DNA of 64,000 bases from Fimbriosthenelais zetlandica (lineage: Eukaryota): positions 12,834,001-12,898,000 of the forward strand of contig OZ365112.1 of assembly GCA_977030845.1 (NCBI GenBank). The letters are read 5' to 3'. Every line of letters starts with the position of its first letter. Position 1 is the stretch's first letter. The notes under the pieces were generated by a model, which saw only the letters and a program-made list of their open reading frames with translations, did no database searches and was not told where the DNA came from. The translations under genes and the position numbers were made by a program. Positions 3,401-24,400 of this stretch are shown piece after piece.

Positions 3401-6400
3401 AATATCCTTAGAGTATGGGGGAGCTTGCAGAAATATTTCTACTAACCTTGTACCCAAGTAAGTCTCCGTTCCAGCTCTCTTGGCTGGGTGGATCCCAGCG
3501 CAGCTTGATTTCTGTAGAACTGATGACCTGAGCAGCAGCATTAGATGGAGCTTCCGTGGGAACTAAAGACAAGGATACTCATTAATCTACGTAAATATCA
3601 TGTAGGTGGTTAGAAAAATGGTATTTATCAAGTTTTATTTTATTTTCCTTAAAGAAATTTTCAGGACTACCGATATTCTTTTGAAAACTTTCGAATTAAA
3701 GTAGTAATAAAATCTCATCGAAATCGATTTAATTAAAATTATTAAGACTATTGATTAAAGGATTATGATTTTATATTAGATATAGTCCATAATGTCTGAA
3801 TCCAAGCCCCAATATTAGCATAGCATATAATTATTAAACTAGTCAGGCATCGTGTGCCTACCACCTTGAGCTGAGAGTAGGAGATAAGAGAGAGAAGTGA
3901 GTGGGTATATATATGTGCTTACCGGCCTCCCCCACATACACATCTACAGGCCTGCTGAAAGGTCCATGGCCCCGCCCATTAAAAGCATTGACCTTAATCT
4001 CATAGGAGACATCAGCATTAAGGTTAATCAGTGTGACGCTTGTAGTGGGATAGGTGACAGTCACTGGGGGATAGGTGCCACTCGACTTGGCTGAGGTGTG
4101 ACGGTCGAGCCGGCGGTACCACACTTGGTACCCCAATGGATCCCCATTCCACGACTCGGTCGGTGGAGGCTAAAACCAAAAGAGCGACGGACAGGGTTAG
4201 AGGTTAGATGCAAGCAGAAAAACAAGAAGGATTTCGAGGTAAGTTTCATCAATGGCATGGCGTTTGAGTTTTGTTTGCGTTTTTGGCAGAGGAAAAGGGT
4301 CAGGGATGTGGATTTTTTAAGATGAATGGCTTGTGTGATATGGAAGGAAGAGGTTTAGGAGTTATATATTAAAGTCATAGGGTGATGAGGGTCTATCACC
4401 CACTCGTATCATTGTTAGAAAAGATGTACAATTGCTGCAATAGATCCTGTAGAGAACGCTAGATATGCCAGCAATCTACACCGTTTTAGCTGCCAGCTTA
4501 TAGGCATATTAAACTATTAAATTAAGGAAGTGGATTTGCATTTCTGTCATTCAACGATCAATTATCTGCCTTGTAAAGAATTTTGAGGTCTTTACAAGTT
4601 CCCAGAGCAAATGTATATCCACTTCCCATTATAGTTAGTGGTTTTGTGGTGAGTTGATTTTGTTTGTGGAGGATGGAAATCCTACCCATTTCAATATAAA
4701 CAACGACGACTTGGCTCCAGGGAGAGTTACCCAGAGCACTGAAGGCTCTGATCCTCAGCTCGTATGTGTGTAAGAATTTAAGTTGCTTCACGAGATGCTC
4801 AGTGGCATAAGGTACATTGAGGACTGAGGACTGCCACTCAGCCGGCACCCCAACCTCTCTATACTCAACCACATAACCTATGAGATCACCATTCCAGGAC
4901 TCCACAGGTGGAGGCTGAGAGAAACACAACATAATACTCATCACTAATAAGTTATTAGCTCATCACTAATATGATCAAAATCTGTCTAAAAAAAAGTCTA
5001 GCAAAGGTTTTTAGAAAGTATATTCCTACTTATAGCTTAACTAAAAGCATTCATCTGCAATATAATTGTTGTTTAAATTTACTCTATATATATGGGACAA
5101 ATGATAAGTTCATAATATAAAGGTGTTCATTTCAGGCAAGGTGAAGATATCTAGCAGTATCATGAAATCTACAGATATAAATGCAAATATATTGCCACAA
5201 AATAATGAGATGGAAATATTTCAAAAACATGGTAAGAGAGCTGAACATTTTTCAAGCGAACCAAATAAATTTGTATCCACTGAAGGACAATTCATACAAC
5301 ACGTAAATTGGCGTATAAATGTGAAGAATTGTTACCTTCTTCAGGGTGTACATTGAGGTAAGAAGATGAATATAAGAACATGAAGGGAGAGGAAAGGTGT
5401 ACCTAATTAAATGTGCAACAAGTGCATTTCTAATTCAGAAGGAACTCAGCATTTACAAGATTCTTTTTCAGGATGACAGTTTAACAATATGATATAATCT
5501 GAAGTATTTTTGGAGAGACGTGTAAATAGTTTCAATTGTATAAAAGGAAAAGTCTCTGAAGAATAAAGCTGTATATTTAAAAGGTAATGATCAATTCCTA
5601 CCTTCCATGAGATGAGGACAGATGTGGTGGTTTTGGGCGCCACAATCACTTCAAGTGGAGGGCTCTCCGGGGCTGAAAACAGCAACATATTTTGATTAGA
5701 GAAAAGAACCGGTACCGATCGTGCATGTTCTATTCACTTCTGCCAAGAGCAGAACTAAAAGGAGACGAAAAGAAAAAGGAATTTAACTCATAGCTATGAA
5801 AGTGGACAATGTGGACAGGAATCTCTTACCAGCCTGCTTGGTGGTCACTTGGTCTGATTCCCCGCTGAACTGACTTGATCCAATGTCATTCACTGCGGCA
5901 ATTCTGAACTTATACTTAGTGTTAGGTCGCAATCTGAAAAAGAACATTTTAAACTTAAATTTCTTGCATTAAAGCACTGAGAAATGAAGGCGATCTTAAA
6001 TGCTAATCACAGACCAACCAAGTAGATTATTAATGGCCTTTAAACAATTTTTTGTTTAATACAAAGAAATTATTTTATAAATGTATGACGTACTCGGTAA
6101 TGGTATAAGCCACAGCATCTGGAGGTACGAGTTTGTCCAGGGTTCTCCAGTCCTCGCCGTCTGGCTGTATCTGTATGGTGTAGTTTCTGATGGGACTGTA
6201 ACCGTTACTGCTGGGCTGCCAGTTAACAGTCACGTAACGGTTACCTACAGCTGACGTACCGATCTGAGGCTCACTGGGCGGGTCTGGTACAGCTACAACA
6301 GTCACACATTAACTCTATTAATATACTACATTCATAGTCAAAATTAACTCTATTAATACACTACATCTATGGCAAGAATTTCGCATGTAGATAACCTACA

Positions 6401-9400: not shown

Positions 9401-12400
9401 TAAGGATTCCGTTTATATGTGGTGGAGAGGTCCACATGACTTGAAGAGAGGTATCCAGAACATTATCAAACCAGAGCATTCCAACCGCATCAGGAACTGT
9501 GAGAAAAGGGAGTATGGTTTATTGAAAATTGAGTAAAAGATCGAAGAAACTACATCTTTAACCGCTGTCCCATTCAATATTGAACTTTGAAGATTTATTC
9601 TAAGAACCATTAATAAAGGAATTATATATTTTACTTACCATCCTCCATGGTTTTGACTGAGACAGGAGGACTCGAGGGACCATCGCCTTTACTGGTGAAG
9701 CAGAGTATACGGATCTGGTAGTTGGTAAACTTGTGGAGGTGGTAGAGGTTGGCCGTCTGTTCACCTAACATGTTAGCCGTGTCTGATGGTATGGTCACCC
9801 AGATCTCTGACCCACTCTCACCGTCTACCTTAGCTTCAATCTGTTCAAAAATGTACAAAATCATTTTAAAATTTTTGATCAAGAAATATAACCCATAGCA
9901 TAGCCCAGAGCAAATTATATTCTTTCCTGTGCATATTCCACAGCATTTTCTTTTACGGATTTAGATATTTTAAAGTTATTTGTTTAATCTTAGGTAAAGA
10001 CGGTCAATGCGACTAGATGCGCTTTACATAATTATTTGACCCACCTTGTAGCCTTGGTTAATACCGTTGATGTACTGAGGACTGGGAGGGATCCACCTGA
10101 TCCGGATGCTGGTTGAGTTGAGAGCGGTAGCTGACACTTTTTTCGGAGCTTGGGTTGGCTTTCCTTCCATAGTTCGAACGTAAATAGTTGAGCTATAAAC
10201 CTGTAATGAAAACAAGTAAGATTTCTAACACTGTAGATAATTCAATTGGAGGGCGATACCTACATAAACGTCCTAGCCCAATATCACTCAATTGGAGGGC
10301 GATACCCACTTAAATGTCCTTGCCCAATATCATTCAACCGGAGGGCGATACCCACATAAAGGTCCTAGCCCAATACCATTCAAATGGAGGGCGATACCCA
10401 CATAAAGGTCCTAGCCCAATATCTTTCAATTGGAGGGCGATACCCATATAAACGTCCTAGCCCAATATCATTCAAATGGAGGGCGATACCCACATAAATG
10501 TCCTAGTCCAAGTCTAGTTTAGATCAAAAATAGACCTGCCCCTGCTCACTGACTATATACGAGATGCCTTACCCCTACACCTTTCCTGTTATAGGCAGCT
10601 GTAGCTATCTCATACTCCTGGAAGACGATCAGACCCTTGAGTTCATACATCTCCCGTAGCCGGCTGGTAATGTTCTCATAGGTGAGAGTTTCATCAGGAT
10701 AGCCTGACGGCTTGAAGCGGATAATGAAGCCTTGTAGAGGACCGTTCCACTTGTCTTCATCTGGAACTTTCCATCGTAGAATGATGGAGGTCTCAGATCG
10801 CGGACTGCCGACTACATCACGAGGTGGTCCACTGGGTGCTGTATGGAAATCAAATTACATTTATATTCAATTTTGCCTCTGATAGGAGTCAATATTGCAT
10901 TTGACCTTGAAAACTGTTCTCATTTCAGAAACTCAGTATTCAACATTCAAACACTTGCTGAAAAGCTTTCATTAAATAGATTACTTCATGCATAACTCAT
11001 GAAGACACTAAGTGAACTCTGGATAGCAAACATCATGTTACTACTGAGGTATTTGAGTAATTTAGTATAGAGAACTTACGTTGTTGAGGTAGGGTAACAG
11101 TCTGGCTTGGTTTGCTGCCCATACCTTCACCTACATCATTGACAGCGCTAACACGGAACTGGTAGGAGCGGGCAGGCAGTAGGCGAGGTACAGTATAGGT
11201 CATCATAGAGGCTGGTACCTGATCATTAGATACCACCCAACCTTCACTGTCTAATAACTCAGTACCTGCAAGAGACAGACAAGTCACTTAAATACCCAGA
11301 TCAAAATTTACAAATAGTAGTTACAACAAGGCAAATAAATGGGTTAAAAAGGTGAGATATTGCCATTTGAGGTCAGGCCAAAAGCAGTGATGCTCAATTG
11401 ACTGCGTAGAAAAATGCATAAAATATGCATACAAATGCATTAATTTCATTTTACAGACCAATGCCAAAAGCTTTTGTATATCCGATAGAATGCTCTTTTT
11501 CAATTGAAGGATTTGAAAGATGGATGCTTGACTGAGGCAAAATGGACAGAGATGCACAAGATCCAAGCCAAAATTTTAACAGATTATGAACCGTGCAAGT
11601 AGTGGTTGAAACGAAGCTACAAAATGATGTGCAAACTACTGGAGCCAAGCCAGACAACATCAAAATTAATACACATAGAAAAAGAAATGTAGATGAGAAT
11701 ATCATGCATTATTTAGAGAAGCATTTGAACAGCACCCAACAGAGAGACAGGAGTGGCAATTGCTTCTGAAAAGAATCGTCGGTTATTTCTGCCAGAATTT
11801 TTGACAAGTTTGCAACAAAAGGTCTTGAGAGATTCCTTGTGGTGTCTTCCAGGGTGACTATCTACTTTTTTAGGTACATCGACCAGACAGGTGGAGCCAA
11901 ATAATAGTTATAAATGAAGTAAAGAAAGAAAAATAGAGAAAGCAAAATGATGACAACATAATATACGGGGCCAACACAATATAAAATAATTTATAAATCA
12001 ACCAAACTGGGTTGCAGGGAGTGGCCAAAATCCACTAATAAACCTACCCATGAGGATCTGAGGCACTGCAAGAATCAACTAAAATGTTACTCTCTCACCC
12101 GGCATTTAATCTAAATTATATGCTTAATTCTGGATCCAGAGCAAAATTAGATATACAGTGCATTATATAATAATCAACTACGGTAGGTGAAGTTAGAGTT
12201 GATATCATTCCACGTGATACATTAGGTTTGTATGAGTACAGTGCAACTAGGCATAACCAACTGTGTCTTGCAACGTATTCAGATACGGATATTATACGTA
12301 AGGGTTATTAAATTATATTAAGAAGCATTAAATGAAAGTGATTTGCCCTTTTTGAGGAAATAAATCAAGTGAAAAATGTCAAAATGTATGTACAGAGGGT

Positions 12401-21400: not shown

Positions 21401-24400
21401 GATGGTGTGATACCAACAACTGTACAGTTTGTAGTAAGCTGCATGAAACATGAACGGATGTGAGCCTACCACCCATCACCTGCACACACCAGATACATTC
21501 TTTATGTGAAGGTATGAATGTTATTAGCACACCTGGGAACCTATATCCCTCACCACTCTATAGCCCAGATAACTGGCGGCTAACCGACCCTCCTACACAC
21601 TCCATCTATACCTCCATATTACACTAGTGGAGGAACTGCTCGCTACATTCCTATCTTTTTGGTTCAGACATAGGAGCAGGTAGGAAAAACAGATGGTAAG
21701 CACTGCTACACATGTGTCCGAGCTATCACAAAACAAAATCACTCAAATATAAACGATTGGAGTCATGATACATCCTGTCTTTCCTATCTTTGTTGCTCAT
21801 TATTGAGGTCCTAGGTATTTCTCCCATCATGGTTTTCATTAGCAGGTCTGGCTTAGCAGTAAAATATTTCTGTGAATGTATAGAATGGCTATACCTGCTA
21901 TGTCGGCAGATTTTTGTCAATGAAAAAAGTTTGAATGATATAAAAGAATGGGGGCAAATGTTTTTGTTATGCTGCTGGGGATGGTGTCTATATATGACCA
22001 GATATAGACCTACACCTCCAACCTTTCCACTGCTCTGCAGAATGTATTAGTAAGACATTAGCACTTGTAACCATCGTCAGACAGGCAGGGATTATGATAG
22101 AGGGCACTTCACAGCAGAGCTGATAAGGTCATCAATGCTATGGTTATCTTAATCATTTCCCTGACGTACTAGAGACTAAAAATCACAAGTTTACTTTTTG
22201 ATTCAGTTTTTGACAGTGATTTAGATACCACTGTGACCATCTGTCAATGACCAACAAATGAGAAACCGGACATGGTACATTAACATGTCAACCAGCGGTC
22301 AGATCTGATCAATGTCCACTTAGCTGGTCACATGTTGCTCACTATTGTATTCACTCCAGTTCTGAGGTTCTGTCCCAAAACACAACCAACACTGAAAAAC
22401 GATGAATGGACAGTGTAAAGAGTAGGGCCAGCACGTACAATATGATTGTTGGTCAATGTGGGGGTTGATTCAATGACATCGGATGTTACTATTCGGATAC
22501 ACGGTTTTAAGTAGTACTGTGGTATTGATGTGAGAAATCAATGTCACAAATAACTTCCGTAGACACCATTAATCCAGCATTATTCCTAAATAGCCCCCAT
22601 CAGATTCTATTACTATCTGACAGGGAGATAGAGAGTGATTCAGAACCATATCATTTACTTGCCTATCAGGGTGGGCCAGGGGAAGAGAAAAGTTTACCCT
22701 CCTAAAAAAAGCCCAAAGCTATGTGACAGACCACAAGTGTCCACATTTCTACAAGGAATGATAAGGACACATGGTTTTTTCCCAGTTTAACCCATTTAGG
22801 AGGAGGAGAACTAATTTCTAAATGCCCCCTGCGTATGAAAACACCTGGTGTTTTCCATCAGTAATGTAGCGCCTTGTGACCCGGTGTGAGATGAGTTATA
22901 ATGTAGACGCCTCCAGTCACACTTTATCTGTATGAACACACTGTGAACGGTCCCAATCACAGTGATGAAGACCTGAGGCGGTGACAGACATGGCCTCCTA
23001 CCCCGCCCCCAGATCACACTGATTGATACCAATCAGCACCTAATTTAAATATTAAACATGTATTAATATTCGCTGTATAAATATCCTTTAGGATATTTAT
23101 ACAGCGAAATAAAAAAATAACTATTAAATATTGGTTTATCTCAGTAAATTGGGTTATCTTTTCGAACTCAAAGAGAAGGTAATTGGAAAGTGGGAGAACT
23201 GGAGAAGAGATGGAAGAAGGTTCCTGCAGGTGAGGTGGGGGGATAGGTTGGTAGGTAGGAGTATGTGCTTGCATACATGTATGTGTTACTGATAAAGAAG
23301 GCACGTGCATGGAGCATGCATTTGGCAGGTCGAACTTCCTTTCCCCTAGGGAGAAAGTGAAACACATGGAAAGGGAGAGACCCCCTCCCTCCGCTTCCCC
23401 TGCCTCAGGTGAAATCTGTCAACTTGAGCAGTAAAAGACCTGTCCTCAGCAGGCTGAGACGACCTGTCTCTCATTCTATACCTCAACTATCCTCCTGTCT
23501 CCATCAGCACACTTCAGGTGACAATTCAAGTCCAGATTCATTGTCACGGAAATGTGTCAAACTTGATGAAGTTTTGTGCGGAAGAGACTAGGGTGTGTGG
23601 GTTGGAGGTAGGGGTCACAGTCTAAATGTAGATCTAGCGCAAGTAATGTCAGAGCCGAGAAACTGTCGTTACACCAAATGTCATGCAAGAAGAGACACCT
23701 AAGATCTTTGACATAGAAGGTACTGCAACGCTATGATCTAACGCCAATAGTCACAAAGTTGACCTGTTCTGTATTCTGTATGCCAGTACAAGTCAAAGTC
23801 AAAGCCAAGCTTCTAAGATCTGAAAAGGATTTCCTTGACTAAAACCAGACTTCCAGGACAAAGTCAAAGTTGAAGGGGTTGAATGAGGAGCAGGTATGTG
23901 GGGTTTTGTGTGATGAATAGAGTGATATTTCTAGGAATGACCAGTGGAGGTTTAGTCTGCTCACCTGTGGCCAGGTGTTACCACCTGTCAGCCTACAGTA
24001 CCAGGTATGGTGTGTGTGAGCCCCTCACAGCTGGTCACCCACTCATTAACCACCTCAATTAATACACCAAAAAAACACACTCAAATCCCATTAATAATTC
24101 TTTTGGAATATTCAGTGAACTTTTGTTGGCCCAATATTCAGTGAACTTTTGTTGGCCCAATATTCAGTGAACTTTTGTTGGACCATGAGGGCCTTAGTGT
24201 TGTTTAATAGCTCTCCATAATATTAATGCCTGGCCAGATTCTCAATCCAAAATGTCCTGGATAACATTGGATCTCCCATATGGAAAGTCTCGGGGTTTTT
24301 CTCTAATAAAATTAACTTTTGTATTTGATTTGAAAGGTGCACTAAGACAACCTTTCGAGACAATGTATGTTAAAAGATAAATTCTGGTTCCTTCGAGATG

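What the first reader, a model, noticed from the sequence alone, without database searches (positions are those of the whole stretch)
3923..4914. Mutually exclusive exon pair encoding two versions of Sidekick FN3 domain 10
Seen: one N-terminal half-domain exon (5602-5672, ends phase 0) is followed by two exons that both start phase 0, end phase 1 and encode the same remaining part of an FN3 fold. They are 27A (229 nt, [14 protein letters not shown]...VYIEM) and 27B (247 nt, [14 protein letters not shown]...VYVGEA). They share 11 of the first 14 residues and then diverge strongly, but both keep the FN3 core and have no stops. No exon for a second N-terminal half lies between them. Including both or neither shifts the frame. 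Established (recalled): the VGEA ending of 27B matches fly and human Sidekick. Inference: 27A is an old, retained exon duplicate giving a Dscam-like domain swap in a gene where I am not aware of one being reported.
Basis: partly seen in the sequence, partly recalled or inferred. Interest (0 to 1): 0.85.

Follow-up and report, generated by a model that had tools for sequence, protein, structure and literature searches.

The report
Alternative exon pair in Sidekick FN3-10
This probably annelid Sidekick cell-adhesion gene carries two side-by-side, anciently diverged and still-selected versions of the exon that builds most of its tenth fibronectin domain. It almost certainly makes two protein forms, and I found no paper describing this switch.

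Summary
Exon 27A (4686-4914) and exon 27B (3923-4169) lie on the minus strand. Both have AG/GT splice sites, start in phase 0 and end in phase 1, and both match positions 22/23-83 of the Pfam fn3 profile. Only one-or-the-other inclusion keeps the reading frame.

No sequencing run was listed for this genome, so splicing here is not shown directly. The comparative evidence is strong:
- **Related genome:** it has the same 26-A-B-28 layout. A is as conserved as the constitutive neighbours (63% vs 68-71% amino-acid identity; pN 0.24 vs 0.20-0.26), while synonymous sites are saturated and introns are unalignable.
- **Lingula anatina:** RefSeq isoforms X1 and X2 differ only by this swap.
- **Transcripts:** intronless transcript contigs from three runs carry the A form; other transcripts carry B.
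- **Other genomes:** unannotated A-type exons sit upstream of B in a nemertean and, more divergent, a limpet. None was found in a scallop, a starfish or a thrips.
- **Tree:** A-type exons form one group (support 95-99%).

Verdict: a real, ancient lophotrochozoan mutually exclusive exon pair. It is present in automatic annotation, but I found no literature report. Other agents noted many such pairs elsewhere in this genome.

The parts
5602..5672 (-). Exon 26: the shared N-terminal part of FN3 domain 10 (A and B strands, ...SVLISWK). It enters in phase 1 and ends in phase 0.
   Evidence: Sequence read. 70% amino-acid identity to L001 9139-9207. Splice sites.
4686..4914 (-). Exon 27A: the alternative C-terminal three quarters of FN10 (BC loop to G strand, ends ...VYIEM). 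229 nt, phase 0 to 1, donor G|GTAGGA.
   Evidence: 63% amino-acid identity to L001 9992-10219. pN 0.24 with saturated pS. Groups with Lingula, Owenia and transcript A-types.
4170..4685 (-). Intron between A and B, 516 nt. It has no coding potential for an FN3 half-domain. It is too long for steric exclusion and its splice sites are not U12-type.
4526..4626 (-). Stable hairpin in the A-B intron, starting about 60 nt after the donor of A (18-nt arms, 89% complementary). A possible regulatory structure; a lead only.
   Evidence: (z -3.9). Hairpins in the equivalent position occur in L001 and Lingula.
3923..4169 (-). Exon 27B: the canonical C-terminal three quarters of FN10 (ends ...VYVGEA). 247 nt, phase 0 to 1, donor G|GTAAGC.
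   Evidence: 70% amino-acid identity to L001 10883-11128, dN/dS about 0.12. The VGEA type is found across Bilateria.
3447..3562 (-). Exon 28: the start of FN11. It enters in phase 1 and accepts either A or B.

Best explanation
The gene is a Sidekick orthologue (Ig domains, then 13 FN3 domains, then a transmembrane helix) on the minus strand.

Its tenth FN3 domain is built from one shared exon (26) plus one of two tandem homologous exons, A or B. Each supplies the BC loop through the G strand and the linker to FN11. The two exons are 229 and 247 nt, both 3n+1. Only transcripts with exactly one of them stay in frame. Including both, or neither, gives an early stop far upstream of the last exon junction, so such transcripts should be removed by nonsense-mediated decay (inferred from established knowledge).

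B is the ancestral, pan-bilaterian version. A is a duplicate that arose no later than the common ancestor of annelids, brachiopods and nemerteans, and probably molluscs. It diverged strongly and has been kept by selection.

The result is two Sidekick isoforms that differ in most of the surface of FN10. The A form is more acidic and carries two conserved tryptophans.

Shown: the exon anatomy, conservation, orthology and use of A in mRNA of relatives.

Inferred: use of both exons in this species, enforcement by nonsense-mediated decay, and any functional difference. A's weaker donor (GTAGG vs GTAAG, conserved in three species) suggests that A is the regulated choice.
For: - **Anatomy and frames:**
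- **Syntenic 26-A-B-28-29 layout in a related genome:** amino-acid identity 70, 63, 70, 68 and 71%. pN for A is 0.24, against 0.18-0.26 for its neighbours. pS is 0.66-0.91 (saturated), and only exons align by blastn.
- **Conserved exon size and splice sites:** A is exactly 229 nt with AG...G|GTAGG in the window, L001/L002 and Lingula.
- **Lingula isoforms:** X2 and X1 are identical except for A-type vs B-type sequence at residues 1573-1646. Both exons lie in tandem in the Lingula gene.
- **Transcripts:** contigs with uninterrupted 2160-2164-codon ORFs from SRR23076782 and ERR13265025/6 carry the A type. The P0190 transcript group carries the B type.
- **Tree:** A-types fall on one side of a branch with support 99/98, or 95/90 once the nemertean and limpet candidates are added.
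- **Structure:** AlphaFold model of the Lingula A-form domain has pLDDT 89.4 and a complete beta sandwich.
- **Gene identity:** Sidekick by tblastn mapping and tree.
Against: There is no RNA evidence from this species: no run was listed, and no short protein fragment carrying A was found.

The Lingula isoforms are automatic predictions, and I could not inspect their transcript support.

I could not name the species behind the transcript contigs. In each of those lineages only one form was assembled, so co-expression of A and B in a single species is shown only by the Lingula annotation.

The A exon is absent from scallop, starfish and thrips genes, so it is dispensable in some lineages.
Confidence: 0.85

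Rival explanations
1. 27A is a silent pseudo-exon in this species: a relic duplicate that is never spliced in, with B constitutive.
For: No transcript evidence exists from this species. A has the weaker donor. Gene models in several relatives contain only B.
Against: A has been kept open, with identical length, phase and splice sites, and with pN equal to constitutive exons, across a divergence that has saturated synonymous sites and erased intron similarity. A is used in mRNA in the closest available relatives.
Confidence: 0.05
2. The choice is fixed per lineage rather than alternative. This species uses only one of the two exons, and the other is on its way to being lost.
For: Transcript assemblies in each related lineage show a single form: the P0083/P0167 groups carry A and the P0190 group carries B. 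Scallop has lost A.
Against: Both A and B are under purifying selection between the window and L001. Lingula is annotated with both forms. Assemblers usually report only the dominant isoform.
Confidence: 0.06
3. Both exons are included together, with or without an overlooked exon, giving either a 14th FN3 domain or a truncated secreted Sidekick.
For: The Owenia model, and an old Lingula model, contain A followed by the tail of B.
Against: A+B shifts the frame and stops 48 codons into B. No FN3 N-terminal half lies in the A-B intron. The Owenia and old Lingula models use an internal in-frame piece of B and look like prediction artefacts. Transcripts and RefSeq isoforms join A directly to the exon 28 equivalent.
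Confidence: 0.03

Closest known systems
Lingula anatina sidekick-2 isoforms X1 (XP_013386795.1) and X2 (XP_013386811.1)
   Same: This is the orthologous exon pair at the same place in FN3-10. A is 229 nt and ends ...VYMEI; B ends ...FVGEA. The exons are tandem in the order A then B, and the proteins are otherwise identical.
   Different: It is an automatic annotation only, and I found no paper on it. Lingula A and window A share only 41% amino-acid identity. Lingula B is 232 nt rather than 247.
FGFR2 IIIb/IIIc mutually exclusive exons (recalled from the literature, not tested here)
   Same: A binary pair of tandem homologous exons swaps the C-terminal part of one beta-sandwich domain of a cell-surface receptor. 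Exon lengths are not multiples of three, so double inclusion or double skipping breaks the frame and should lead to nonsense-mediated decay.
   Different: FGFR2 swaps half of a ligand-binding Ig domain, with a known change in ligand specificity and known tissue-specific regulators. Here the domain is a stalk FN3 with no known partner, and no regulator is known.
Arthropod Dscam1 exon 4, 6 and 9 clusters
   Same: Tandem exon duplicates encode alternative versions of part or all of a beta-sandwich domain in a neuronal immunoglobulin-superfamily adhesion molecule.
   Different: Dscam1 has dozens of variants in the homophilic-binding Ig domains, chosen through docking-site and selector RNA pairing. 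Here there are two variants in FN3-10, far from the Ig1-4 homophilic interface (PMC5045292). No docking or selector pairing was found.

Membership tests
Sidekick (Sdk) adhesion molecules | Ectodomain of 6 Ig domains followed by 13 FN3 domains (PMC5045292, PMC10084454) | tested here: met
   Sidekick proteins from Owenia and Lingula map colinearly onto minus-strand exons from 29362 to 384. The Ig and FN3 ORFs lie in the expected order. The A/B position corresponds to residues about 1571-1647, which is the 10th FN3.
Sidekick (Sdk) adhesion molecules | Single transmembrane helix after FN13 | tested here: met
   An ORF at about 384-488 encodes ...[26 protein letters not shown]..., 75% identical to Lingula residues 1962-1989.
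Sidekick (Sdk) adhesion molecules | C-terminal PDZ-binding motif (GFSSFV) | not testable with these tools
   The cytoplasmic tail exons lie beyond the start of the window. The motif is present in all six aligned orthologues.
Sidekick (Sdk) adhesion molecules | Groups with Sidekick orthologues in a tree | tested here: met
   The window's pseudo-protein falls in a 99%-supported group with transcript-derived Sidekicks, next to Owenia, Lingula and Tubulanus.
Mutually exclusive exon pair from tandem exon duplication | Adjacent exons that are homologous and encode the same part of the protein | tested here: met
   34% amino-acid identity, E 9e-16. Same fn3 profile span.
Mutually exclusive exon pair from tandem exon duplication | Same entry and exit phase, canonical splice sites on both exons, frame kept only with exactly one | tested here: met
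Mutually exclusive exon pair from tandem exon duplication | Both copies maintained by purifying selection | tested here: met
   pN is 0.24 for A and 0.18 for B, against saturated pS. Introns are unalignable.
Mutually exclusive exon pair from tandem exon duplication | Mature transcripts contain one or the other exon, never both | tested here: inconclusive
   Met in relatives: Lingula X1/X2, A-only transcripts and B-only transcripts. Not testable in this species, because no run was listed.
Dscam-type competing RNA structure (docking site and selector) | Conserved intronic docking sequence complementary to a selector next to each variant exon | tested here: inconclusive
   No conserved intronic block exists between the window and L001. 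Whole-intron duplex energies are not consistently above shuffles. The only recurring feature is a hairpin inside the A-B intron.

The most novel reading that the evidence does not exclude
Lophotrochozoan Sidekick carries a binary FN3-10 switch that dates from the Cambrian or earlier. Under this reading the switch is regulated by cell type, partly through a positionally conserved hairpin in the intron between the two exons. The A form, acidic and with two conserved tryptophans, would give the Sidekick stalk a distinct interaction, such as cis clustering, membrane apposition or an unknown partner. That would be the first specific function tied to a single Sidekick FN3 domain.
Probability: 0.3. 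Interest if true: 0.65.

Novelty: new member of a known kind. Interest (0 to 1): 0.5.

Why it matters
Sidekicks are well-studied synaptic-specificity molecules. Their 13 FN3 domains are usually treated as a passive stalk. The main review says only that splice variants exist and that their significance is unknown (PMC7479261).

An exon pair kept for roughly half a billion years in several phyla, rewriting most of one particular FN3 domain, points to FN10 as a functional site. It also offers a natural two-allele experiment for asking what that domain does.

A practical point follows. The pair has misled gene predictors: the Owenia model and an old Lingula model fuse A with part of B, and the nemertean and limpet A exons are unannotated.

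The finding is not surprising in kind. Mutually exclusive exon pairs are common in adhesion receptors, and other agents noted many in this same genome.

Tried and rejected
- **Sequencing runs:** two searches (RNA, then any kind) listed none, so read laying could not be used.
- **Word-index search with the 27A peptide:** no candidates.
- **Region-restricted search with P0083:** found only itself and P0167.
- **Locus fetches that failed:** the Owenia locus was withheld and the P0040 contig had no DNA. I could not examine those genomes directly.
- **Whole-intron RNA duplex energies vs shuffles:** uninformative, with giant unrealistic duplexes (window i1-i3 z -2.7, L001 z -1.4). I dropped this as evidence for docking/selector pairing.
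- **Steric hindrance:** rejected, because the intron is 516 nt.
- **U2/U12 incompatibility:** rejected, because all four splice sites are GT-AG with U2-type donors.
- **A hidden exon making a 14th FN3:** rejected.
- **dN/dS:** could not be estimated for A because synonymous sites are saturated. I report pN and pS instead.
- **Literature:** searches for Sidekick with mutually exclusive or alternative exons found nothing relevant. The library lacks most subscription journals.

Full report
**The sequence.** The gene runs on the minus strand. I read it directly.
- Exon 26 (5602-5672, 71 nt) enters in phase 1 and ends in phase 0 with ...SVLISWK.
- Exon 27A (4686-4914, 229 nt) follows a pyrimidine tract and AG, starts in phase 0 with [10 protein letters not shown] and ends ...VYIEM plus one base at G|GTAGGA.
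- Exon 27B (3923-4169, 247 nt) has the same build: it starts [10 protein letters not shown] and ends ...VYVGEA plus one base at G|GTAAGC.
- Exon 28 (3447-3562) enters in phase 1.

The translations have no stops. The two peptides share 11 of the first 14 residues and 34% overall (E 9e-16). Both match Pfam fn3 over profile positions 22/23 to 82/83 of 84. Each therefore supplies the same three quarters of an FN3 domain, from the BC loop to the G strand. Exon 26 supplies the A and B strands.

Joined in silico, 26-A-28-29 and 26-B-28-29 stay open. The join 26-A-B-28 stops 48 codons into B, and 26-28 stops in exon 29. None of the three introns holds anything resembling an FN3 N-terminal half, so a hidden 14th domain is excluded.

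**Gene identity.** Stop-free minus-strand segments show Ig domains from about 18800 to 12900, FN3 domains from about 12500 to 600, and a transmembrane helix near 384-488. Sidekick proteins from Owenia and Lingula map colinearly along the whole stretch. In a tree of full-length Sidekicks, the window's protein sits in a 99%-supported group with transcript-derived proteins. That group lies next to the annelid Owenia, the brachiopod Lingula and the nemertean Tubulanus, and outside the mollusc clade. This fits other agents' notes that the genome is probably an annelid's. The A/B position corresponds to the tenth FN3 domain.

**RNA in this species.** Splicing in this species remains untested.

**Is 27A alive?** A phmmer search with the 27A peptide against 1.8 billion representative proteins found two short ORFs from large ENA contigs with 62-64% identity over the whole exon. 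For one of them I fetched the DNA, as two 95%-identical contigs, L001 and L002. The layout there is the same as in the window. Amino-acid identity to the window:

| Exon | Identity to window |
|---|---|
| 26 | 70% |
| A | 63% |
| B | 70% |
| 28 | 68% |
| 29 | 71% |

- A is exactly 229 nt, and B is 247 nt, in both species. The splice sites are conserved, including the weaker GTAGG donor on A and the GTAAG donor on B.
- Non-synonymous divergence of A (pN 0.24) equals that of exons 26, 28 and 29 (0.26, 0.24, 0.20). B has pN 0.18.
- Synonymous sites are saturated (pS 0.66-0.91), and blastn aligns only the exons, not the introns.

A neutral pseudo-exon could not have stayed open, kept its length and kept 63% amino-acid identity over that distance.

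**Is it used?** *Lingula anatina* RefSeq isoforms X2 and X1 are identical except at residues 1573-1646. There X2 has an A-type sequence ending ...VYMEI, and X1 has a B-type sequence ending ...FVGEA. Both exons lie in tandem in the Lingula gene. A is again 229 nt, and the intron between A and B is 475 nt.

Logan contigs of 7.1-7.6 kb, from runs SRR23076782, ERR13265025 and ERR13265026, carry uninterrupted ORFs of 2160-2164 codons, so they are spliced mRNAs. Their FN10 is A-type (...IYLEI) and is joined directly to the equivalents of exons 26 and 28. These are among the closest relatives of the window's gene. A sister group of transcripts (P0190) carries B. The Owenia model, and an old Lingula model, contain A followed by an in-frame tail of B. 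This is the typical prediction error caused by such a pair, and it also shows that Owenia has both exons.

**Age and spread.** I scanned fetched gene loci with small profiles built from the A and B types.
- **No A exon found:** the scallop *Mizuhopecten*, the starfish *Acanthaster*, and the thrips *Frankliniella*, where the intron positions also differ.
- **Nemertean *Tubulanus*:** an unannotated A-type exon of 232 nt, with AG/GT sites, ending ...VDMEL, about 1.4 kb upstream of B.
- **Limpet *Lottia*:** a divergent candidate of 223 nt, with AG/GT sites, carrying the GPWS motif, about 0.5 kb upstream of B.
- **Arthropods, echinoderms, vertebrates:** all protein representatives carry B-type sequence ending VGEA or a close variant.

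In a tree of the exon peptides, the A types fall on one side of a branch with 99/98% support. Support is 95/90% once the nemertean and limpet candidates are added. The limpet sequence is a long branch, so its place is unsure.

So B is the ancestral form. A arose once, no later than the common ancestor of annelids, brachiopods and nemerteans, and probably of molluscs too, and was later lost in some lineages. The tree is unrooted, so an even older origin followed by losses cannot be excluded.

**How it most likely works.** Frame arithmetic makes the two exons mutually exclusive at the protein level. Every A or B exon measured is 3n+1 nt long:

| Species | A (nt) | B (nt) |
|---|---|---|
| Window | 229 | 247 |
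| L001/L002 | 229 | 247 |
| Lingula | 229 | 232 |
| Tubulanus | 232 | 226 |
| Lottia | 223 | not measured |
| Mizuhopecten | none found | 226 |
| Acanthaster | none found | 229 |

Double inclusion or double skipping gives early stops, which should trigger nonsense-mediated decay. That step is inferred from established knowledge, not tested here. Steric exclusion is ruled out by the 516-nt intron, and U2/U12 incompatibility by the splice-site sequences. I found no docking or selector pairing. The conserved weaker donor of A suggests that A needs activation.

One lead is worth following. In the window, L001 and Lingula, one of the few strongest local hairpins in the whole Sidekick locus lies inside the A-B intron, and it starts 40-80 nt after A's donor. 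The sequences are unrelated, so only the position is shared. A rough joint chance, taken from the hairpin density in each locus, is on the order of 1e-4. I chose the thresholds after seeing the data, so this is a lead and not a finding.

**The protein.** An AlphaFold model of the Lingula A-form domain (shared N-terminal part plus A) is a confident, complete beta sandwich (pLDDT 89.4, pTM 0.81). A types are more acidic than the window's B (charge about -2 to -4, against about 0). They also keep two tryptophans that B lacks: one near residue 27 and one in a (S/G)PWS motif before the last strand. Sidekick homophilic binding uses Ig1-4 (PMC5045292), so the switch should not change that interface directly. 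A change in stalk interactions is a guess.

**Novelty.** Full-text searches for Sidekick with mutually exclusive or alternative exons gave no report. The Sidekick review says only that splice variants exist and that their significance is unknown (PMC7479261). The swap does exist in automatic annotation of Lingula. Mutually exclusive pairs are a well-known kind of gene structure, and other agents noted many in this genome. I class this as a new member of a known kind, of moderate interest.

Noticed in passing
window 4526-4543 / 4609-4626; L001 10300-10319 / 10480-10499; L004 21779-21797 / 21988-22006: In three species a stable hairpin lies inside the intron between A and B and starts 40-80 nt after A's donor (z -3.9, -3.9, -2.7). 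The sequences are unrelated; only the position is shared. Such strong local hairpins are rare in each locus, about 2-5 per 20-30 kb.
   Followed up: partly
window 3896-3922: The blastn match between the window and L001 runs about 27 nt past B's donor (gtaagcaca...cactca). This is the only intronic stretch that aligns.
   Followed up: no
L009 15511-15742 (Tubulanus); L010 14694-14916 (Lottia): Unannotated A-type exons with AG/GT sites and the correct phase lie upstream of the annotated B exon. The Lottia copy is very divergent.
   Followed up: partly
P0023 residues 1575-1679 (Owenia); P0166 residues 2006-2111 (old Lingula model): These gene models fuse the A exon with an in-frame tail of the B exon. 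They look like annotation artefacts caused by the exon pair.
   Followed up: partly
P0151 vs P0152 (Lingula isoforms X1 and X3), residue 1844: A further Lingula variant differs by a 10-residue insert (ELDNQVQHFG) near the junction of FN12 and FN13. This suggests a separate small alternative exon in the stalk.
   Followed up: no
L011 13896-14366 (Frankliniella): In the thrips gene the C-terminal part of FN10 and the start of FN11 lie in one exon. The intron that ends exon B in lophotrochozoans and echinoderms is missing there.
   Followed up: no
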